Under the pieces are notes generated by a model. It searched no databases and had not been told where the DNA came from. It saw only the letters and a program-made list of their open reading frames with translations. From Camelus ferus (Eukaryota), in the NCBI RefSeq assembly GCF_009834535.1, contig NC_045699.1, forward strand, positions 68,572,001-68,636,000: 64,000 nucleotides of DNA, given 5' to 3'. The translations under genes and the position numbers were made by a program. Positions 6,401-15,601 of this stretch are shown piece by piece. Within the stretch, counting starts at the first letter, position 1; every line of letters starts with the position of its first letter.

Positions 6401-8850
6401 CAGCCACTTGTTGCCTTGCCAGAGGCAGAAATCCATGTAAACAAACAGAAGGGGAAAAGTCCCCTGAACAATGCAGTCACATAGCTCCTTAGATAAACAA
6501 TGCAGCTCTTACTAGCTCCTTAGACCTTCAGGTCCGAATTATTTAAACCAGATTTCAGAATAAGGGTCTGCTTGAACAAAAGGGACTATAGCTAAAAAAT
6601 AAGTTTGAAAGACAATGATCTGATCCAACAGTATCATCTTACAGATGAAACTGGGGCTCAGGGGAGGAAGCGATTTTCCTGAGGCCACCCAGCAAGCTGG
6701 TGGCAGAGATGACCTTGAAACTCAGATGGTCTCCTAATTCAAGGGGCGGGGGCTCTCCTCACCACACCCTGTGGCTCTGCTGGTGCTTCTAATGGAGAGA
6801 CTGAAGGCAAGTGGCTGCCCCTTGAGGCTGGGGGTGAGGGAGATCACCTGAGCAGTAAGTCAAACAGCAACCACTCCTTACTGAATGTTTACTCTGCACC
6901 AGGCCCTGTATTAAGGGATTAGTATAAAAACAAAAATCTCATTTAAACTTCATAAGTGTAAACTTCATAACAGTATTACCCCAATTTTACCAATGTGGAA
7001 ACAGAGACCCAAAGAGCTTAAGTAATTTGCCCAAAACCACATCTCCAGCAGAGGCAGAAGGTAGTATTCAAATCCAGAATTCTTAACCAATACCTGATAT
7101 TTCTTTCACAATCTTAACCACTACCCTCTGCCGTCCCCTGAGTACCCCATCCCCGGAAACTGGCTAGCCAAGACTTACATCCTTAGGCGAGGGACAACCA
7201 CCAGAAGTGGTTGCCTCAGGGCTACTGCCATTCTTAATCTTTCTTTTTTTCTTAGCTCCTGCAGGAACACCAGGGCTGTTCTTCTGCTGATATTCTCTTA
7301 ACTGCAAAAAGGAGAAGTAAGTCTCATGAGAACTATAAGCCCCCAGGTATTCACATCCTACTTTACAGTTTACAAATTCCTCTTCTAATTGCCATCTGAT
7401 TTAATGCCACAACAACCCTACAAGGTGTTGTAATTCTCAACGACTTAAGAAATGAATTGGTAACATGGCTAGAGAAGGAGAAAAGCAATAATGGACAATA
7501 GGTAATTTAAACTTATTCTTCTGACTCTGAGTTCTGGGGTTATGACATCAATCAGCAGTTGCCAGGGGGCAAAACCAGAGGCAGAGGTGGAAAAGTAAAC
7601 ATTTAATCAGACATCAGGGGTCCCTCTCACACATCTGTTAGAGCTGCACACCAGTACTTCTGAAACTTTTACATCAATGTATCCTAATGGCAGAAGGCAG
7701 TGAAGACACACCCCTAGCGAATGTGGGAATGTTAACAGAAAGAGGACAATCCAAACGCCATTTCAGAGAGAAGTCTATTATAATCTTACAAATCTATCCA
7801 AATGTCATCCCTAAGTACATTAATATAAAAGGCCTTTTCTCTTATAATAGAACCGAGCAAAACGGATGCTTCAGGCCCATATTTATCCTGTGGCACTCAG
7901 GGCACCCCATGTTGAGACGATGATTTGGGAAAGATTCCCAGCTGTGAAGTTCAATTTCCCAGGATCTGTTCCACAGAACTCCAAAGAGCACTGAATGAGG
8001 GGCACTCTGGTCTCAGAATCATAGGGAATTAGACTGTAAGGTAGAAAATTCTTATTTAAAATGTGAAAGTCTCTCTGGACAGAAACCTGGGAGAAAAACA
8101 AACTAAACAAAGCATATTCTCCCCATTGCCACCCAGAGATATTGTCAATGTTTTGAGATCATTGGTGAAGTGTAGGCTTTTTTACACTATCGACATCTAA
8201 TGATGGGGTACAGTCTACAGAGTAAGGGAGCCTGAAACCTAGATCCAACCTAGGTCCCACAGTCGCGAGGCCCCTTCCACCTAAATTTGTGCCGCGACTA
8301 GAGAAACTGGAAAAGGTGTGAAAACACTAGGGGACTGGGTCGTAAGATCAAACACGGGGCTCGTGGCGGTAATGACAGTTCCAAGGCGGATAATGACGTA
8401 ACTACATTCCACTCCTCCCTACTGACGCCCGAGTCGCCGCTCCGCGGTGGGGGAAGGGAGCGCAAGGCCAGGACCGAGGTCCTTGGAGACCGGGAGCACA
8501 GGGAGCCCAGGGAGCCCAGGGAGCCCAGGAGATCCGGTTCTGGGCGGCAGGAGGCGAGGGCCGAGCCTGGAGCGGGGAGTCCCGGGGGTCACCTGCCCAA
8601 AGTCGCCCGAGGGTGACAAGTAAAAGCGGGGGCTGGGTTGCGGGGGGGCGGGACTAGCTGAGAATACTTTTGAGGGAGGGGCGCCAAAGGGCGCCGAGGG
8701 GCTCGCCCCGTGTGCCTCAGAGGCAGCACGGACTCTGGCCATGGCCCGGCCGTCGGAGGGGTCTCGGGCTGGGTCAGGGAGCCGCGACCCCGCACATTTT
8801 ACCTTTTTCTTGGCCGCAGCCAATTTGCTCTGTCGGGTTTCTTCCGACAT
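333..8850 (-). CDS. GOLGA2: Golgin subfamily A member 2 (GM130), multi-exon CDS span, 3'-partial
   Basis: Twelve GT-AG coding exons join in frame (8850-8803, 7301-7179, 6236-6156, 3286-3170, 2890-2847, 2708-2645, 2229-2173, 1974-1894, 1086-1048, 774-712, 622-529, 439-333). Product [37 protein letters not shown]...[13 protein letters not shown]...[11 protein letters not shown] is the GM130 N-terminus. Confidence 0.97.
529..622 (-). CDS. GOLGA2: GOLGA2 coding exon 11
   Basis: ccaaag|GTCCAC...AAGCAG|gtggga; [31 protein letters not shown]. Confidence 0.95.
712..774 (-). CDS. GOLGA2: GOLGA2 coding exon 10
   Basis: ctgcag|GAGAAG...CTGCAG|gttcgt; [21 protein letters not shown]. Confidence 0.93.
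1048..1086 (-). CDS. GOLGA2: GOLGA2 coding exon 9
   Basis: ccacag|AAACAA...GAAAAG|gtaacg; 39 nt, [13 protein letters not shown]. Confidence 0.9.
1894..1974 (-). CDS. GOLGA2: GOLGA2 coding exon 8
   Basis: cctcag|AGCCGG...GAATTG|gtaaga; [27 protein letters not shown]. Confidence 0.93.
2173..2229 (-). CDS. GOLGA2: GOLGA2 coding exon 7
   Basis: tcctag|TCTACA...CTGGAG|gtaagt; [19 protein letters not shown]. Confidence 0.92.
2645..2708 (-). CDS. GOLGA2: GOLGA2 coding exon 6
   Basis: ctccag|ATCTTT...TCTGAG|gtaccc; [21 protein letters not shown]. Confidence 0.94.
2717..2764 (+). mobile_element. Solo poly(A) insertion (A22) with a 13-bp target-site duplication
   Basis: GAACACAGGAGTC-A22-GAACACAGGAGTC. 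Confidence 0.75.
2847..2890 (-). CDS. GOLGA2: GOLGA2 coding exon 5
   Basis: gaacag|AACCAT...AAGCAC|gtgagt; [14 protein letters not shown](T). Confidence 0.9.
3170..3286 (-). CDS. GOLGA2: GOLGA2 coding exon 4
   Basis: tgacag|GCGCCC...ACTCAG|gtttgt; [39 protein letters not shown]. Confidence 0.88.
6156..6236 (-). CDS. GOLGA2: GOLGA2 81-nt cassette exon 3
   Basis: ctgtag|ATTCAG...TGGAAG|gtgagg; phase 0/0, [27 protein letters not shown], matches the alternative GM130 segment as recalled. Confidence 0.88.
6630..7090. mobile_element. MIR SINE fragments
   Basis: Core-like text ttacagatgaaactggggctcag and cccaattttaccaatgtggaaacagagacccaaagagcttaagtaatttgccc; boundaries approximate. Confidence 0.6.
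7179..7301 (-). CDS. GOLGA2: GOLGA2 coding exon 2
   Basis: ttgcag|TTAAGA...AAGGAT|gtaagt; [41 protein letters not shown]. Confidence 0.96.
8803..8850 (-). CDS. GOLGA2: GOLGA2 coding exon 1
   Basis: ATG at 8850-8848; [16 protein letters not shown]|gtaaaa. Confidence 0.95.
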
Positions 8851-9266
8851 CCCGGGACGGGGAGGGGGAAGGGGAGGGCCACATCAGCACGATCCCGGCA
8901 ACCACTGCGGAGCTGCTTCCGGCAGCCACCGCGCCGCTGTGCGACTGAGCCAGAAAAGGAGGGACCAGGGCAGTTCTAGGCAGCAGCGGTGTGGTGTGGG
9001 CGTGGCCTAAATTCTACAACCCCATTGGTCGATGGGAAAGATGAAAGGGAAAGGGGACGTGGTCAGAACGCCGCGAGCCTGGAGGAACAAGTGGAGCCAT
9101 AATAAAAGCTGCGCGCGCAGCCTTTGTCCCCGCCCACCTCGGCGGGGAGGGGCGGGGCCCGATCTCAGGGTGCGCGCGCAGCTAGCTGTGTGACCGGTTG
9201 TTCATGGTCTCCATTACGGGATTCTGAATACCTGGCGGACCCGAGAGGCCGCTTTCCATCCCCGCC

Positions 9267-9328
9267 CTGGACCCTTCTGCGCTGCAGACACCCCCGAGAC
9301 GGGGGCCCTGGACCCCAGGGCTCAAGAG
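9267..9328 (+). CDS. SWI5: SWI5 coding exon 1 (CUG start inferred)
   Basis: gccCTGg context; phase-2 donor AAGAG|gtgggc matches the phase-2 acceptor at 9659; in-frame TGA upstream at 9225-9227. Confidence 0.65.
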
Positions 9329-12300
9329 GTGGGCGAGGAGCAGACAGCAGGGGGAAAGCACATCTTTTCCCAGTCCCTTTCCCCACTTCCCATAGCTGTG
9401 CCCCAGACTTTTTCTTCTCAGGGATCACTTCCAGAGACCCCCAACCACTCCTCCCACACTCCTCCCTGTCAGAATCTCCCCTTCCTTGAGGATCCCTAAC
9501 CTGATCCTGGGAGTATTATCTGCCCCCTTCCCAACCGAATCCAGTCCCGTTCACTCCTACTTCACATCTGTTCCTCCTCTCACACCCCCACACTACCCCT
9601 TTCCTCCCAAAGCGGACTCTAGGTCCAATCAGCCTTTTTCGCTCGGATTCCTCTCCAGGACTCAACCAGGACTTTCCAAAAGTTGCCGCGGGGCCTTCCG
9701 ATCCCCTGTGAGTATGCCTGTGCGTCCCTCGACCCCCTCTCCCCGCCCCGTAAGCCACTGCTGCTCCTGGCCCACCCTCTTCTCCATCCCCAACGGCAGC
9801 TGACCCACCCCCAGCCCTCTTCAAGTTCTTCCCCTAGCTGACCTTATTCTGCTAAGAAACTCCAGGTCATTTCTCAGTCCTTCCCTTCCTATTCCTCCAG
9901 CCCCCAAGCTTCAAAGAAGAAGCAGTGCCCTGTCCTTTTCAGTGGTACCCCAGGCTTTCCAAATGGGCTGTGTCTCTCCTCCTTCCTGACAGCACCGCAG
10001 GTGGTTGGTTTTGTTTTTTTCACACCACAGTCCCTCCCTCACCCAATCCACCCACATGGAAACCACTCTCATTCCCTCAAACACCTGTGTTCTCTGCTGC
10101 CTTTGGGCATTTGGATACACTGTCCCCTGTCTGGAATACTTTCCTTTCAGCTTTTTGCCAAACTGATGCCTACTCATCCTTTAAAGTTGAGCTTCCTCAG
10201 AAAAGTCTCACCTCCACTTCTGGCACCGGCCTGTTGCTCTGTTTGATACTCTCTTAGCCCACTGTACTTCAACATCAAAGCACTTTCAGACTGGTAGTTA
10301 GTTGCTTGGTTATTTGTCATTCACTCATTCATCTGACAAATTCATTTGAAATAGTGCCTACTCTGTGCCATGTACTGTTGTAGACACAGGGCAGTTAGCA
10401 GTGAATAAGACAAAGTCTCTCCCTCATGGTAATTACACTCCAGTGGTACAAGGCCAACAATGGGAATAGTATTATTAGTGAAATGTGCAATATGTCAGGT
10501 GTGATAGATACTACAAAACATCAGGCCAAGAGGATAGTGCGTGAGTGAGGAGTGGCATTTTAAATGGAGCTGTCAGGGAAGGCCTTTCTGATGAAGTGGT
10601 GTGACCTGTGAGCAGAGTTTTAAGTGGAAGTATCTGGAGGAAGAGCGTAATTGTGGGATGTTTTATGTTTGGGACCAGGCTATACGTTCCATGACGGCAG
10701 GAGGCCAGACTTGACAACCCCCATTGCTGAACCCCTGGAGGCTTTGCCAGTGCCTGGCAGCTAGTGCTTACTCATGATTTGTTGAGTAACTGGTTAAAAG
10801 CCCCTGTTCGAAGAATAGGAACCACGTCTTCCTCCATCTCTTGTACCACAGTTGATACAACACACATTTCCTGTAGATTAGCAGTGTACCAGGCACTGGC
10901 CTGCACAGCTTTTAGACACAGAAAGGACAAAGATGAACTGTAGCCCCAGGGAAGGGTTTTGCTACCCAATGAGATTATAAACCCAGTGACATCCTAAACT
11001 TGAGAGGTGAATCCAAGAATTAGACCTGAGGTGGATTCTCTGGGGTCAGATTGGGGACCAGGATGGGCCCTTTAGTTACAGTTGGGTTTGGCTGGGAGTA
11101 AAAGAAAACCCCAAATAATGGTGGCTTAAACAATCATCAGGGACCCATGTCTGTATCTTGTTCTAGCACATCTTCAGTGTGGCTTCTCCCTTATTATCCA
11201 AGATACCATTCAACTCCAGCATCCCTCCAACCCAGCAGGAAGAAGGAAGGCCAGACAAAGGCATGCCCTCTCCCTGGCAGGATGATTCCCAGATATTGCG
11301 TAGACCATTTCTGATTAAGTTCCACTATAACTTAGTTATGGCACCACATCTAATTCCAAGGGAAGCTGGGAAATGTAGTCTTATTCTGGGGTAGAGGATG
11401 TCTATTACCAACCAGAAGCAGGGAGTGGATACAAGGGGACAACTTACAGTTTCTGAATTGCGGATAGTTGGTCAGTCCAGCTAATGACTTTTTGTGCCTC
11501 TCAGCGGCCATCTCCCAAGTCTGGCCAGGCTGATGGGGCCAGTGAGGATTCTCTGCACCTTGACATTCAGAAGCTGAAGGAGAAGAGGGACATGCTAGAC
11601 AAGGAGATCTCCCAACTAACATCTGAGTAAGTCTCATTGGATTCCTCAGTGTGCTTGAGATAACTTTTAACTTTTAACTAGTTACTGTCACTGATACCTA
11701 GCTTAGCATAAAAACAGGACTGTGACGTTGGAGTCTGGGTATCTCAGCAACCGTCTCAGATAGGGTGCGGTCAGGCTCAGGAGGACCAGGAACCAGGAAC
11801 TGGATAGCTGTGGCTTTCCCAGTCTCTTTGTGTGGCTCGCCTTCTCTGCCTGTGCTTCTCTCTGCCCACAGGCTCCGTCCTCTCCCTGCAGGTGGAGTTT
11901 TCAGTGCCCCAGGGAAGCTAACTCTTCTGCAGCTCCTGGGTTTTCCCATGCCCCTCGCTCCAGCCACATGGCACAGACTGAGCAGCACTTGAATATACAT
12001 TTCACACTTGAGGGGACCTGACTAGCCACTTGTGTGCTGATCTGTGAGTCATTCGGCTGTGACCAGGGTTACATAGTGCCAGTGTGGCAGGGACCCCTCC
12101 TGAGGGTATAGGGAGCATTTAGTAGTGAGGGAGTGGGCAGATCCCCGGCCCTTCCTTAAGTGCATGAGGGCAGGGTCTGTCGTGGCATCACTGTATCCCC
12201 AGTGCTAAGCGCCTAGTAGGCCCTGAGTGAACATTGGTTAAATAGATGCTTCATTACTGCTGAACGTTGGAGCCTCACCAGCTTTCTTAACGATTCTCTC

Positions 12301-13925
12301 TCTCCATCTCTTACCCTAGAGGCTACAGTGTGGATGAACTGGAGGACCACATCTCCCAGCTCCACGAGTATAATGACATCAAGGACGTAGGCCAGATGCT
12401 GCTGGGCAAACTGGGTGAGCAGCAGGACTCCTGAGGAGCGCCCAGGGCCTGCAGGGAGGCCCCACATCCCAGGAGTGGTTGGATTTTGCTCCTGGGCCTT
12501 GTAATTTGCCAACTCCCCTACTGTTCCCAGCTGCCACGCTCCCTGAATGCCCCTGCCTTCTCTGGCCACCTAGCAAAGCAGCTGCACAGCTCTTCCCTGG
12601 GTCCCTTAGGTTGTATTCCCTTGAGTATAGAGCCTGCTTTGGGGCCACAGGCTGTTTTGAGCCTGGGCTCGCCTGCCTGCCTGAGGACAAGGGAGCGCAG
12701 TCTTCTGGGGCCTCCTTAGACCAACGGAGGCCCCACCCTTGCCTCAAGTGGCCAATGTGCTGCAGAGGCAGAAAGCACAAGGGTGACTCTGTGACTTAAA
12801 GGAGTATTTTGTTCCTCCTTGACACAGTCTCGCTATCCAGAGGGCTGAGCCAAGGCACAGACACACTGACCATTTGGGACAGTGCTCAGAGCTGGGCTGT
12901 CTGCCTGAGTTGTAGTACTTGCTGTAGAATTGCCCATCAGCATCCAGGATGCCACAGCAGGAAAGGCTTCTCCCTGTTTCCATGGGGAGTGGGTCCCAAA
13001 GGAGGGAAGGGAGAAAGCAGAAGGAGGGAAACAGAGGTGAAGACAGGAGGAGGATCAGGGCCCAAGGAGAAAGGAATGTGAGGGGACTTTGAGGTTAAGA
13101 GAAATAAGCTCCTATTAGACAGAACCCAGCTCGAGACCTGTCCTTCCAGGTTGTAGGACCCAGAGCAGGCGGCCCATCGTCTTTCATTCACCCAGTGACT
13201 ATTTCCTACTCTGTGCTGCTTTACAGGGCATGGGGACACTTTGGTGAACCAGACACTTACAGGTCTCTGTTCTCCTGCGACTTATGTTTTGGTGTTGGGG
13301 TGGGGGAGGGGAATGGTCAAGAAGGGTAAAGAAACACAAATGAATGAATTATAAAATGTGTTAAGTGTCGTAAAGGATACAAAGGACAGAAATGGAAAAT
13401 ATTGAGGCCTGAACAGGGTGGCAGGTGGGGATGAGAGAAGGGGATCAGGGAACGCCTCTGAGGAGAGCCCTTCCCGCGGGAGGAAAGCAGAGTCTTGGAG
13501 GAAGCAGGAGGGATGGCTTCACCTAGCGGCAGGGCGCCCCTGCACCAGGGTTTGCAGCTGGCTGCGGATACTACATAAATGTAAATTTATATTTTCAGCA
13601 CATGACTCATGCCGCTCTGTGTGAAGAAAGGACTCTAGGGGAGCTTTGTTTGCCTCCTCTGCAAAGTGGGTGAAGTTTAAGTGAGTCTCATGGACCGGGC
13701 CCCCAGTGAAGGGACCTGGAACAAGTAGCAGCAGGATTTTCTTGGCCAACTAGGGCAGCAAGAAGAAGGGGCCGGGTGGGTCCCAGGAGGGCCGGGGCTT
13801 TGGCCATTCTCCCTCCTACTTCTCCCATGGGACATTTATCCTTCCTTCCTTCCTTTTCAGCCATGATCCGAGGTGTCACCACCAAAGAGTTGTATCCAGA
13901 ATTTGGCCTGGACGTGAATGACTGA
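9267..13925 (+). CDS. SWI5: SWI5 homologous recombination repair protein, multi-exon CDS (130 aa, probable CUG start)
   Basis: Exons 9267-9328, 9659-9707, 11505-11626, 12320-12414 and 13861-13925 total 393 nt in frame. C-terminal Swi5 domain DIQKLKEK...LHEYNDIKDVGQMLLGKLAMIRGVTTKELYPEFGLDVND*. Confidence 0.9.
9659..9707 (+). CDS. SWI5: SWI5 coding exon 2
   Basis: ctccag|GACTCA...TCCCCT|gtgagt; TQPGLSKSCRGAFRSP. Confidence 0.85.
10050..10680. mobile_element. L2 LINE 3' fragments
   Basis: tcattcactcattcatctgacaaat...cagtgaataagacaaagtc...gtcagggaaggcctttctga; boundaries approximate. Confidence 0.6.
11075..11400. mobile_element. Old MaLR (MLT1-type) LTR fragment
   Basis: aaaccccaaataatggtggcttaaacaa...aagggaagctgggaaatgtagtctt resembles MLT1J/K ends as recalled. 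Confidence 0.5.
11505..11626 (+). CDS. SWI5: SWI5 coding exon 3
   Basis: tctcag|CGGCCA...TCTGA|gtaagt; RPSPKSGQADGASEDSLHLDIQKLKEKRDMLDKEISQLTSE. Confidence 0.95.
12320..12414 (+). CDS. SWI5: SWI5 coding exon 4
   Basis: ccctag|AGGCTA...AACTGG|gtgagc; GYSVDELEDHISQLHEYNDIKDVGQMLLGKL. Confidence 0.95.
13861..13925 (+). CDS. SWI5: SWI5 coding exon 5 (stop)
   Basis: tttcag|CCATGATC...GACTGA; (A)MIRGVTTKELYPEFGLDVND*. Confidence 0.95.
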
Positions 13926-14010: not shown

Positions 14011-14016
14011 AATAAA
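14011..14016 (+). promoter_or_regulatory. SWI5 polyadenylation signal AATAAA
   Basis: Canonical hexamer 85 nt after the SWI5 stop codon. Confidence 0.75.
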
Positions 14017-14026
14017 CATGAGTGAT

Positions 14027-15601
<1,575 letters not shown>

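What the first reader, a model, noticed from the sequence alone, without database searches (positions are those of the whole stretch)
9264..9330. SWI5 appears to initiate at a CUG codon in perfect Kozak context
Seen: the exon-2 acceptor (9659) needs a phase-2 donor, and AAGAG|GTGGGC at 9328/9329 fits. That frame has no ATG after the in-frame TGA at 9225-9227, but gccCTGg at 9267 gives exactly 62 coding nt and a 130-aa protein, the length I recall for the human reference isoform. A GC-rich stem (GGGCCCTGG-acc-CCAGGGCTC, 9303-9323) follows. The next in-frame ATG (11592) would remove part of the Swi5 domain helix. Inference: non-AUG initiation limits or tunes SWI5 and hence SWI5-SFR1/RAD51 activity.
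Basis: partly seen in the sequence, partly recalled or inferred. Interest (0 to 1): 0.7.

Follow-up and report, generated by a model that had tools for sequence, protein, structure and literature searches.

The report
Camel SWI5 starts at conserved CUG
The camel DNA-repair gene SWI5 has no usable AUG in its first coding exon and almost certainly starts translation at a CUG codon kept in every mammal examined, which matches published evidence for human SWI5 and so is real but not new.

Summary
CTG 9267-9269 lies in CGCC-CTG-G. An in-frame TGA lies at 9225-9227, and there is no in-frame ATG before the donor at 9328/9329. Splicing 9267-9328, 9659-9707, 11505-11626, 12320-12414 and 13861-13925 gives a 130-aa SWI5.

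I fetched exon 1 from 10 other placental orders. CCTGGAC is invariant in all 11 species, and -3 is always a purine. CTG to donor is always 62 nt with no indels.
- Downstream of the CTG, pN/pS is 0.34 in the CTG frame and above 1 in the other two frames.
- In the 48 nt upstream, pN/pS is 1.06, with frame-shifting indels.
- Five of the 11 species have an in-frame stop and no ATG upstream.
- The next in-frame ATG (11592, Met67) is missing in six of the 11 species. Five of these have no in-frame ATG anywhere in exon 3.

A published supplementary table lists a human N-terminal peptide, MDPLAPLNPLIR, assigned to a CTG in SWI5. Ensembl-derived models in several species already begin with M at this codon. 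Mouse work in 2010 suspected a non-AUG start.

So the CUG initiation reading is strongly supported, but it is already known. The "tuning of RAD51 activity" idea is untested.

The parts
9204..9227 (+). Short upstream ORF (ATG, 7 codons, TGA). Its stop at 9225-9227 is the in-frame stop that closes the SWI5 frame upstream of the CTG.
   Evidence: The ATG is not conserved: it reads CTG, CCG or ACG in most other species.
9263..9270 (+). Initiation site CGCC-CTG-G, with the CUG start codon at 9267-9269.
   Evidence: CCTGGAC is invariant in 11/11 mammals. Position -3 is a purine in 11/11 and -4 is C in 9/11. The motif CGCCCUGG was individually tested as an efficient CUG site in PMC5778536, and a G at +4 gives about 10x for CUG.
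9267..9328 (+). Coding part of SWI5 exon 1: 62 nt, 20 codons plus 2 nt, with the donor AG|GTGGGC.
   Evidence: There are no indels in 11 species. pN/pS is 0.34 in this frame (0.13 for the RGPRTPGLR block) against 1.36 and 3.23 in the other frames. Changes by codon position are 14/8/24.
9291..9305 (+). Small CCCCC-N5-GGGGG hairpin starting 24 nt after the CUG. It is present in the consensus fold of 11 species.
   Evidence: It shows almost no covariation (term 0.07), and its bases are also constrained as the Pro-Pro-x-Arg-Gly codons.
9303..9323 (+).
   Evidence: It folds at -15.7 kcal/mol in camel but at -1.6 to -11.4 in the other 10 species. It is not in the consensus structure.
9659..9707 (+). 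SWI5 exon 2 (49 nt, encoding (R)TQPGLSKSCRGAFRSP).
   Evidence: The acceptor and donor are conserved, with no indels in 11 species.
11505..11626 (+). SWI5 exon 3 (122 nt).
11533..11535 (+). First ATG downstream of the CUG. It is out of frame and opens a 14-codon ORF.
   Evidence: It is present in 10 of 11 species.
11592..11594 (+). Next in-frame ATG (Met67), inside the Swi5 domain.
   Evidence: It is replaced by GTG, CTG, ACA or ACG in 6 of 11 species.
12320..12414 (+). SWI5 exon 4 (95 nt), the core of the Swi5 domain.
   Evidence: This piece alone hits Pfam PF07061 at E = 1.2e-11.
13861..13925 (+). SWI5 exon 5 with stop TGA. The AATAAA signal follows at 14011-14016.
8447..8554 (+). Alternative upstream first exon used in some species' models ([14 protein letters not shown]...GGRR). 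It lies antisense within the 5' end of GOLGA2.
   Evidence: tblastn and sequence. In camel it has no in-frame ATG (GTG sits where primates have ATG), an in-frame stop upstream, and GC instead of GT at the donor.

Best explanation
This is the 5' end of camel SWI5, the small partner of SFR1 that stimulates RAD51. The main ORF of the exon-1 transcript is initiated at the CUG at 9267-9269, read as Met by initiator tRNA. The product is a 130-aa protein with a roughly 50-residue N-terminal tail, which contains the conserved RGPRTPGLRR and FRSP motifs, ahead of the Swi5 domain.

Scanning 40S subunits meet no in-frame AUG. The strong context (C at -4, G at -3, G at +4) makes the CUG a usable start. 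Ribosomes that scan past it first meet an out-of-frame AUG at 11533 and then, in camel, an in-frame AUG at 11592 that would give a truncated domain.

Shown here:
- the gene structure;
- the absence of an AUG;
- the invariance of the codon and its context;
- the boundary of the coding signature at the codon.

Taken from the literature: a human N-terminal peptide that starts at the orthologous CTG.

Inferred:
- that camel ribosomes use this codon;
- that initiation efficiency is sub-maximal;
- any regulatory purpose.
For: - Camel frame: the in-frame TGA is 42 nt upstream, with no in-frame ATG before the donor.
- Conservation: across 11 placental orders CCTGGAC is invariant, -3 is always a purine, and CTG to donor is always 62 nt.
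- Other species without an AUG: rhinoceros, sloth (TAA only 24 nt upstream), badger and oryx, like camel, have an in-frame stop upstream and no in-frame ATG.
- Coding signature: pN/pS is 0.34 in the CTG frame, and 0.28 in the 7 gap-free species with codon-position changes of 7/6/19. The 48 nt upstream give 1.06 with changes of 17/19/14 and twice the substitution density. The upstream flank carries 1-, 2- and 28-nt indels.
- Downstream Met: Met67 is absent in 6 of 11 species, and 5 of them have no in-frame ATG in exons 1-3 at all.
- Protein models: about 65 mammalian models read L at this position whenever they read through it, and M only when they start there. The Microcebus Ensembl-derived model P0100 starts MDPPAPLN, where that species' DNA reads CTG GAC CCT.
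- Colinear 130-aa proteins: wombat P0132, hare P0112, cattle P0071 and lion P0051.
- Mouse: both AUG-initiated cDNA products (89 and 121 aa) run faster than endogenous Swi5, and the authors raise a non-AUG initiation codon as one possible explanation (PMC2954829).
- Context: CGCCCUGG is an efficient CUG context (PMC5778536).
Against: - There are no camel transcript, Ribo-seq or peptide data, so the TSS and real exon usage are unknown.
- If the TSS lies upstream of 9204, a 7-codon uORF precedes the CUG.
- Six of 11 species do have an open in-frame ATG further upstream, so longer AUG-initiated forms cannot be excluded in those species.
- The provenance label of the human peptide table is ambiguous. 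The sheet is named after Yeom et al., while its header cites 'Lee, 2012, PMC4014282'. I could not open that paper, and the peptide was not in the held supplements of Yeom et al..
- A single Leu codon staying CTG in 11 species is only modest evidence on its own, since about 20% of third positions in this stretch are invariant.
Confidence: 0.85

Rival explanations
1. Exon 1 is only 5' UTR. The real protein comes from another, AUG-containing first exon, such as the upstream exon 1a that gives the MGEG... isoform in primates.
For: Models in several species use an alternative first exon, and it exists in the camel window at 8447-8554. Mouse cDNAs have alternative first exons.
Against: In camel that exon has GTG instead of ATG, an in-frame stop upstream, no other in-frame ATG, and a GC donor. 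Exon 1 downstream of the CTG shows clear protein-coding selection in the CTG frame, which a UTR would not. In mouse the AUG forms are smaller than the endogenous protein.
Confidence: 0.05
2. Translation starts only at the first in-frame AUG (11592, Met67) and gives a 64-aa protein.
For: It is the first in-frame AUG of the camel mRNA, and its -3 position is G.
Against: It is preceded by an out-of-frame AUG. It removes about 13 residues of the Swi5 domain. It is absent in 6 of 11 species. Exons 1-2 and the start of exon 3 are under purifying selection as protein.
Confidence: 0.03
3. Initiation is at a different near-cognate codon in the same frame. Candidates are the second CTG at 9282 or the AUA, AGG or AUC codons between 9228 and 9260.
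For: These codons exist in frame in camel. The CTG at 9282 has G at -3.
Against: The CTG at 9282 has C at +4, and a non-G at +4 strongly lowers CUG use. That codon is CTA in sloth and badger, CCA in mouse lemur and TTG in pika. The upstream candidates lie in a stretch with pN/pS of about 1 and frame-shifting indels. The sloth's stop, 24 nt upstream, leaves no other near-cognate codon before the CTG. The human peptide starts at the first CTG.
Confidence: 0.05
4. The NCBI dromedary model is right. In that model an ATG near 9033 starts a 208-aa protein that reads exon 1 in the +1 frame and regains the SWI5 frame through an extended exon 2.
For: Protein P0004 from Camelus dromedarius matches the window's frame-1 translation.
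Against: That frame has pN/pS of 1.36-2.0 across mammals. The model needs a roughly 46-nt intron, by my reading of the coordinates. Models of this kind use different frames and ATGs in each species, which is the pattern expected when a pipeline must find an ATG.
Confidence: 0.02

Closest known systems
Human SWI5 CUG-initiated proteoform (N-terminal peptide MDPLAPLNPLIR; NM_001040011)
   Same: It uses the orthologous codon. Primate read-through models show ...PALDPLAPLNPLIRGPRTPGLRR, with L where the peptide has M. The exon structure and the 130-aa product of the short form are the same.
   Different: In the table the human CTG lies 196 nt downstream of an annotated upstream start and is classed as an N-terminal truncation. 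Camel has a stop 42 nt upstream and no such ATG, so here the CUG is the only possible start in this exon.
Mouse Swi5 (Akamatsu and Jasin 2010, PMC2954829)
   Same: The AUG-initiated cDNA products are smaller than the endogenous protein, and the authors raise a non-AUG initiation codon as one possible reason.
   Different: Muroid N-termini have diverged (mouse MGSRGG..., hamster P0146), and the LDP...RGPRTPGLRR motif is not recognisable there. The start was never mapped.
Conserved non-AUG-initiated mammalian genes listed in Supplementary Data 3 of PMC9789052 (e.g. EIF4G2, TEAD1/3/4, GTF3A, R3HCC1, KCTD11)
   Same: A near-cognate start in a strong context, a coding signature with no conserved AUG upstream, and conservation across mammals (for the list).
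   Different: Most listed cases are N-terminal extensions of an AUG-initiated protein. In camel SWI5 the CUG starts the only form that contains a complete Swi5 domain.
Fission yeast Swi5 (PDB 3viq chain B) / Pfam PF07061
   Same: Residues 53-127 of the 130-aa mammalian protein align to the yeast protein (E = 6.8e-6). The Pfam Swi5 match has E of about 1e-25.
   Different: The 85-aa yeast chain in PDB 3viq aligns only with residues 53-127. The roughly 50-residue N-terminal tail that the CUG adds has no counterpart in it.

Membership tests
Conserved non-AUG (CUG) initiated main ORF | No in-frame AUG between the nearest upstream in-frame stop and the conserved coding sequence. | tested here: met
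   Met in camel and in 4 further species.
Conserved non-AUG (CUG) initiated main ORF | The near-cognate codon itself is conserved across species. | tested here: met
   CTG in 11/11 species at the DNA level. About 65 protein models read L there whenever they read through it.
Conserved non-AUG (CUG) initiated main ORF | Favourable initiation context (purine at -3, G at +4). | tested here: met
   Purine at -3 in 11/11, G at +4 in 11/11 and C at -4 in 9/11. The effect sizes come from PMC5778536.
Conserved non-AUG (CUG) initiated main ORF | The protein-coding substitution pattern begins at the codon and is absent upstream. | tested here: met
   pN/pS is 0.28-0.34 downstream and 1.06 upstream. Codon periodicity appears only downstream, and indels only upstream.
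Conserved non-AUG (CUG) initiated main ORF | Direct evidence of initiation, such as an initiation-profiling peak or an N-terminal peptide with Met. | not testable with these tools
   There are no camel data. For the human orthologue a published table lists the peptide MDPLAPLNPLIR at the CTG, but the primary paper could not be opened.
Conserved non-AUG (CUG) initiated main ORF | A downstream hairpin at the spacing reported to aid weak start codons (about 14 nt, from my own knowledge of Kozak 1990). | tested here: not met
A small conserved hairpin starts 24 nt downstream and shows no covariation. This is an accessory feature, not a defining one.
Swi5 family (Pfam PF07061) | A significant match to the Swi5 domain model. 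| tested here: met
   The camel exon 4 translation matches at E = 1.2e-11, 45 bits against a cut-off of 22.1. The near-identical camel model P0004 and cattle P0071 match at E = 2.2e-25.
Swi5 family (Pfam PF07061) | Conserved genomic neighbourhood (head-to-head with GOLGA2) that identifies the orthologue. | tested here: met
   GOLGA2 is the divergent neighbour in all 10 fetched loci. The GOLGA2 start codon is readable on the minus strand at 8850-8848.

The most novel reading that the evidence does not exclude
The CUG start of SWI5 may be an ancient, actively maintained feature of all mammals. Platypus, echidna and brushtail possum models also read Leu at this position. Several lineages have independently changed it: wombat and hare models start with Met at the codon, and tenrecs and elephant shrews have a Met a few codons downstream. 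This would imply selection for a particular, probably sub-maximal or condition-dependent, rate of SWI5 synthesis that sets the level of the SWI5-SFR1 RAD51 cofactor. The nearly invariant out-of-frame AUG in exon 3 could act as a trap that prevents synthesis of a truncated Swi5 domain by ribosomes that skip the CUG.
Probability: 0.2. Interest if true: 0.55.

Novelty: already known. Interest (0 to 1): 0.33.

Why it matters
SWI5-SFR1 is a conserved cofactor of RAD51. Its true N-terminus decides which protein people express, tag, knock out and quantify.

Automatic annotation gets this gene wrong in most mammals. The models I retrieved use different ATGs, wrong frames and implausible small introns, and this includes the dromedary model. 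The practical value is therefore a corrected camel gene model and a clear comparative argument for the CUG start.

Biologically, it adds one more well-supported case of a gene whose full-domain protein depends on a non-AUG codon. However, the start site in the human orthologue is already on record, and the reason for using CUG remains unknown.

Tried and rejected
1. I tested whether the stem is a conserved structure. It is perfect only in camel, is weak in Myotis, Talpa and Ochotona (-1.6 to -3.8 kcal/mol), and is not in the consensus fold. Rejected as a conserved feature.
2. Either/or pattern of ATGs. In the 11 species with DNA, an open upstream in-frame ATG and an in-frame ATG in exon 3 looked almost mutually exclusive (10 of 11; one-tailed Fisher about 0.013 by hand). 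The wider protein set breaks this. Lynx, dog, Rhinolophus, Hipposideros and naked mole-rat models lack both. Rejected as chance.
3. ATG-to-CTG change in the placental ancestor. I first read wombat's Met as showing this. Brushtail possum, platypus and echidna models read Leu there, so Leu is more likely ancestral for mammals. The codons themselves could not be checked, because wombat DNA was not retrievable.
4. Literature searches. Searches for SWI5 with near-cognate, non-ATG, CUG or translation initiation gave nothing relevant. The primary N-terminomics paper was not held, and the peptide was not in the held supplements of Yeom et al..
5. Rfam scan of 8300-9900. Only a chance-level miRNA hit (E = 0.84).
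6. Tenrec look-up. No gene was on record.
Full report
**What is in the window**

In agreement, a Camelus dromedarius SWI5 model (P0004) is nearly identical to translations of the window.

SWI5 lies on the + strand, head to head with GOLGA2. The GOLGA2 start codon is readable on the minus strand at 8850-8848.

I rebuilt the gene from the sequence. The exon 1 coding part ends at 9328 (AG|GTGGGC). The remaining exons are:
- exon 2, 9659-9707;
- exon 3, 11505-11626;
- exon 4, 12320-12414;
- exon 5, 13861-13925, ending in TGA, with AATAAA at 14011-14016.

Exon 3 opens in phase 0, which fixes the frame of exon 2.

**Checking the observation**

In that frame the nearest upstream stop is TGA at 9225-9227. 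No ATG lies between it and the donor.

The CTG at 9267-9269 sits in cccgccCTGg, and CTG to donor is 62 nt. The spliced ORF from the CTG is 393 nt, giving 130 aa.

The next in-frame ATG is at 11592 (Met67). The Pfam Swi5 domain covers residues 54/55-129 of the colinear 130-aa orthologues.

The stem at 9303-9323 is real in camel: 9 bp, -15.7 kcal/mol.

A purine-NN-CTG-G motif would turn up in about 34 codon slots with an expectation of roughly 0.2. The camel sequence alone therefore proves little.

**Comparative test**

A protein search anchored on exon 2 and two follow-up searches returned about 130 mammalian SWI5 models.

Wherever a model reads through the position of the camel CTG, it has Leu (...A-L-D-P-x-A-L-Q...R-G-P-R-T-P-G-L-R-R). 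It has Met only when the model begins there. Upstream of that Leu the models disagree wildly. They use different ATGs, different frames of exon 1, small introns and extended acceptors. This is what a pipeline that must find an ATG would produce.

I then fetched the genomic loci of ten species from ten other placental orders: elephant, sloth, porcupine, pika, mouse lemur, mole, Myotis, badger, rhinoceros and oryx. I aligned exon 1. The results were:
- **Codon and context.** CCTGGAC (-1, CTG, GAC) is invariant in 11/11. Position -3 is always G or A, and -4 is C in 9/11.
- **Length.** CTG to donor is 62 nt in all species, and exon 2 is 49 nt in all, without indels.
- **No AUG in five species.** Camel, rhinoceros, sloth, badger and oryx have an in-frame stop upstream and no in-frame ATG. 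In the sloth the stop is only 24 nt upstream, and no other near-cognate codon lies between it and the CTG.
- **Coding signal downstream.** pN/pS is 0.34 in the CTG frame (0.13 over RGPRTPGLR), against 1.36 and 3.23 in the other frames. Minimum changes by codon position are 14/8/24 (chi-square p = 0.014).
- **No coding signal upstream.** In the seven species alignable without gaps, the 48 nt upstream give pN/pS of 1.06, no periodicity (17/19/14) and twice the substitution density. The other four species carry 1-, 2- or 28-nt indels there.

The coding signal therefore switches on at the CTG.

**The downstream Met is not a fallback**

Met67 is present only in camel, rhinoceros, mouse lemur, sloth and oryx. 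Myotis and elephant have GTG, pika and badger have CTG, and mole and porcupine have ACA or ACG.

Five species have no in-frame ATG anywhere in exon 1 (from the CTG), exon 2 or exon 3.

**The alternative first exon does not help in camel**

The exon that gives MGEG...-type N-termini in primates lies at 8447-8554. In camel it has GTG at the primate ATG position, an in-frame stop just upstream, no other in-frame ATG, and GC instead of GT at the donor.

**Published evidence**

Akamatsu and Jasin cloned mouse Swi5 cDNAs encoding 89 and 121 aa. [quoted passage not shown]

Supplementary Data 3 of Fedorova et al. (PMC9789052) reproduces a table of N-terminal peptides. [quoted passage not shown] The primate read-through models show ...PALDPLAPLNPLIRGPRTPGLRR, so this peptide is the orthologue of the camel start with Met in place of Leu.

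The table's provenance label is ambiguous. The sheet is named after Yeom et al., while its header cites 'Lee, 2012, PMC4014282'. I could not open that paper, and the peptide was not in Yeom's held supplements.

Ensembl-derived UniProt entries already begin with M at this codon. They include cattle and lion (130 aa) and longer models in dingo, goat, night monkey, sifaka and mouse lemur. For mouse lemur I verified that the DNA reads CTG GAC CCT where the model reads M-D-P.

Diaz de Arce et al. tested CGCCCUGG individually, which is exactly the camel -4 to +4 motif. They report that G at +4 raises CUG use about tenfold and that C at -4 and a purine at -3 help (PMC5778536).

**Structure**

In the other species it has an internal mismatch or is very weak, and it is not part of the RNAalifold consensus.

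The consensus has two elements: a small CCCCC/GGGGG hairpin at 9291-9305, and a pairing of CCUGG (including the start codon) with CCAGG at 9315-9319. The paired columns are almost all invariant, so covariation is nil (0.07). These bases are also constrained as codons.

The exon-1 segment folds only modestly better than shuffles (z = -1.74). Rfam finds nothing.

I conclude there is no evidence for a conserved initiation-enhancing structure.

**Deeper history**

A search with the wombat protein, followed by cluster look-ups, showed that platypus, echidna and brushtail possum models also read A-L-D/E at this position. NCBI marks all three models as partial.

Wombat and hare models, both 130 aa, start with Met at the codon. 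Tenrecs and elephant shrews start with Met a few codons downstream. Leu, presumably CUG, is thus probably ancestral for mammals, with scattered later gains of AUG. The codons in these species could not be checked, because wombat DNA was not retrievable.

Gecko and shark proteins have longer AUG-initiated N-termini. They still contain RRTP-x-G and F-K/R-S-P, so the tail encoded by exons 1-2 is old.

**Verdict**

It is the orthologue of a start site already recorded for human SWI5 and already used in Ensembl-derived models, so I class it as already known.

- a clean comparative demonstration that the coding signal begins at the CUG;
- the finding that the downstream Met is dispensable in evolution;
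- evidence that the NCBI dromedary model's N-terminus is an artefact;
- rejection of the hairpin as a conserved element.

The functional claim, that the CUG start tunes SWI5-SFR1/RAD51 activity, remains untested speculation.

Noticed in passing
window 8447-8554 (+): An alternative SWI5 first exon lies antisense inside the 5' end of GOLGA2. In camel it has GTG where primates have ATG, an in-frame stop upstream, and a GC rather than GT donor, so it cannot supply an AUG start here.
   Followed up: partly
window 9033-9328 (+), protein P0004: The NCBI dromedary SWI5 model (208 aa) starts at an ATG near 9033. It reads exon 1 in the +1 frame, which shows no coding selection, and appears to need an intron of about 46 nt. 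Its N-terminus is probably an annotation artefact.
   Followed up: partly
window 11533-11535 (+): An out-of-frame ATG in exon 3 (GAT-GG or AAT-GG) is present in 10 of 11 species. It is the first AUG met by ribosomes that skip the CUG. It might intercept them before the in-frame Met67, or it might simply follow from the conserved Asp-Gly codons.
   Followed up: no
window 11592-11594 (+): The in-frame Met67 is replaced by Val, Leu or Thr in 6 of 11 species, so it is not a conserved alternative start.
   Followed up: yes
window 9614-9658 (+): The 45 nt upstream of the exon 2 acceptor are unusually conserved. In some species' models they serve as an in-frame exon extension that adds 15 residues (...ADSRSNQPFSLGFLS...), which suggests an alternative 3' splice site.
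   Followed up: no
window 9100-9190 (+): Conserved promoter-like elements sit between GOLGA2 and SWI5: ACAATGAAAG followed by CTGCGCGCGCAG, a GGGGCGGGGC box, and TGCGCGCGCAG. The ATG in the first element is the 'MKA...' start chosen in several species' models. Camel has ATA there.
   Followed up: no
window 9204-9227 (+): A 7-codon upstream ORF (MVSITGF-stop) ends 39 nt before the CUG. Its ATG is shared only with mouse lemur and pika, and it matters only if the TSS lies upstream of it.
   Followed up: partly
window 14302-15472 (+): An alpha-tubulin-like open reading stretch, interrupted by masked N runs (14121-14301, 14902-15033), lies directly after the SWI5 poly(A) signal. It looks like a retrocopy and was already noted by the scan.
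   Followed up: no
proteins P0132, P0112, P0077, P0083, P0108, P0126: Wombat and hare models start with Met exactly at the CUG position. Tenrec and elephant-shrew models start with Met a few codons downstream (MLPTPP..., MLQTP...). These look like independent gains of an AUG, but the codons are unverified.
   Followed up: partly
window 9309-9311 (+): Camel has TGG (Trp) where all 10 other species have CGG or GGG (Arg or Gly) in the conserved RGPRTPGLRR motif, and AAG (Lys) at 9324-9326 where the other 10 have an Arg codon (AGG or CGG). The first change creates the perfect camel stem.
   Followed up: yes
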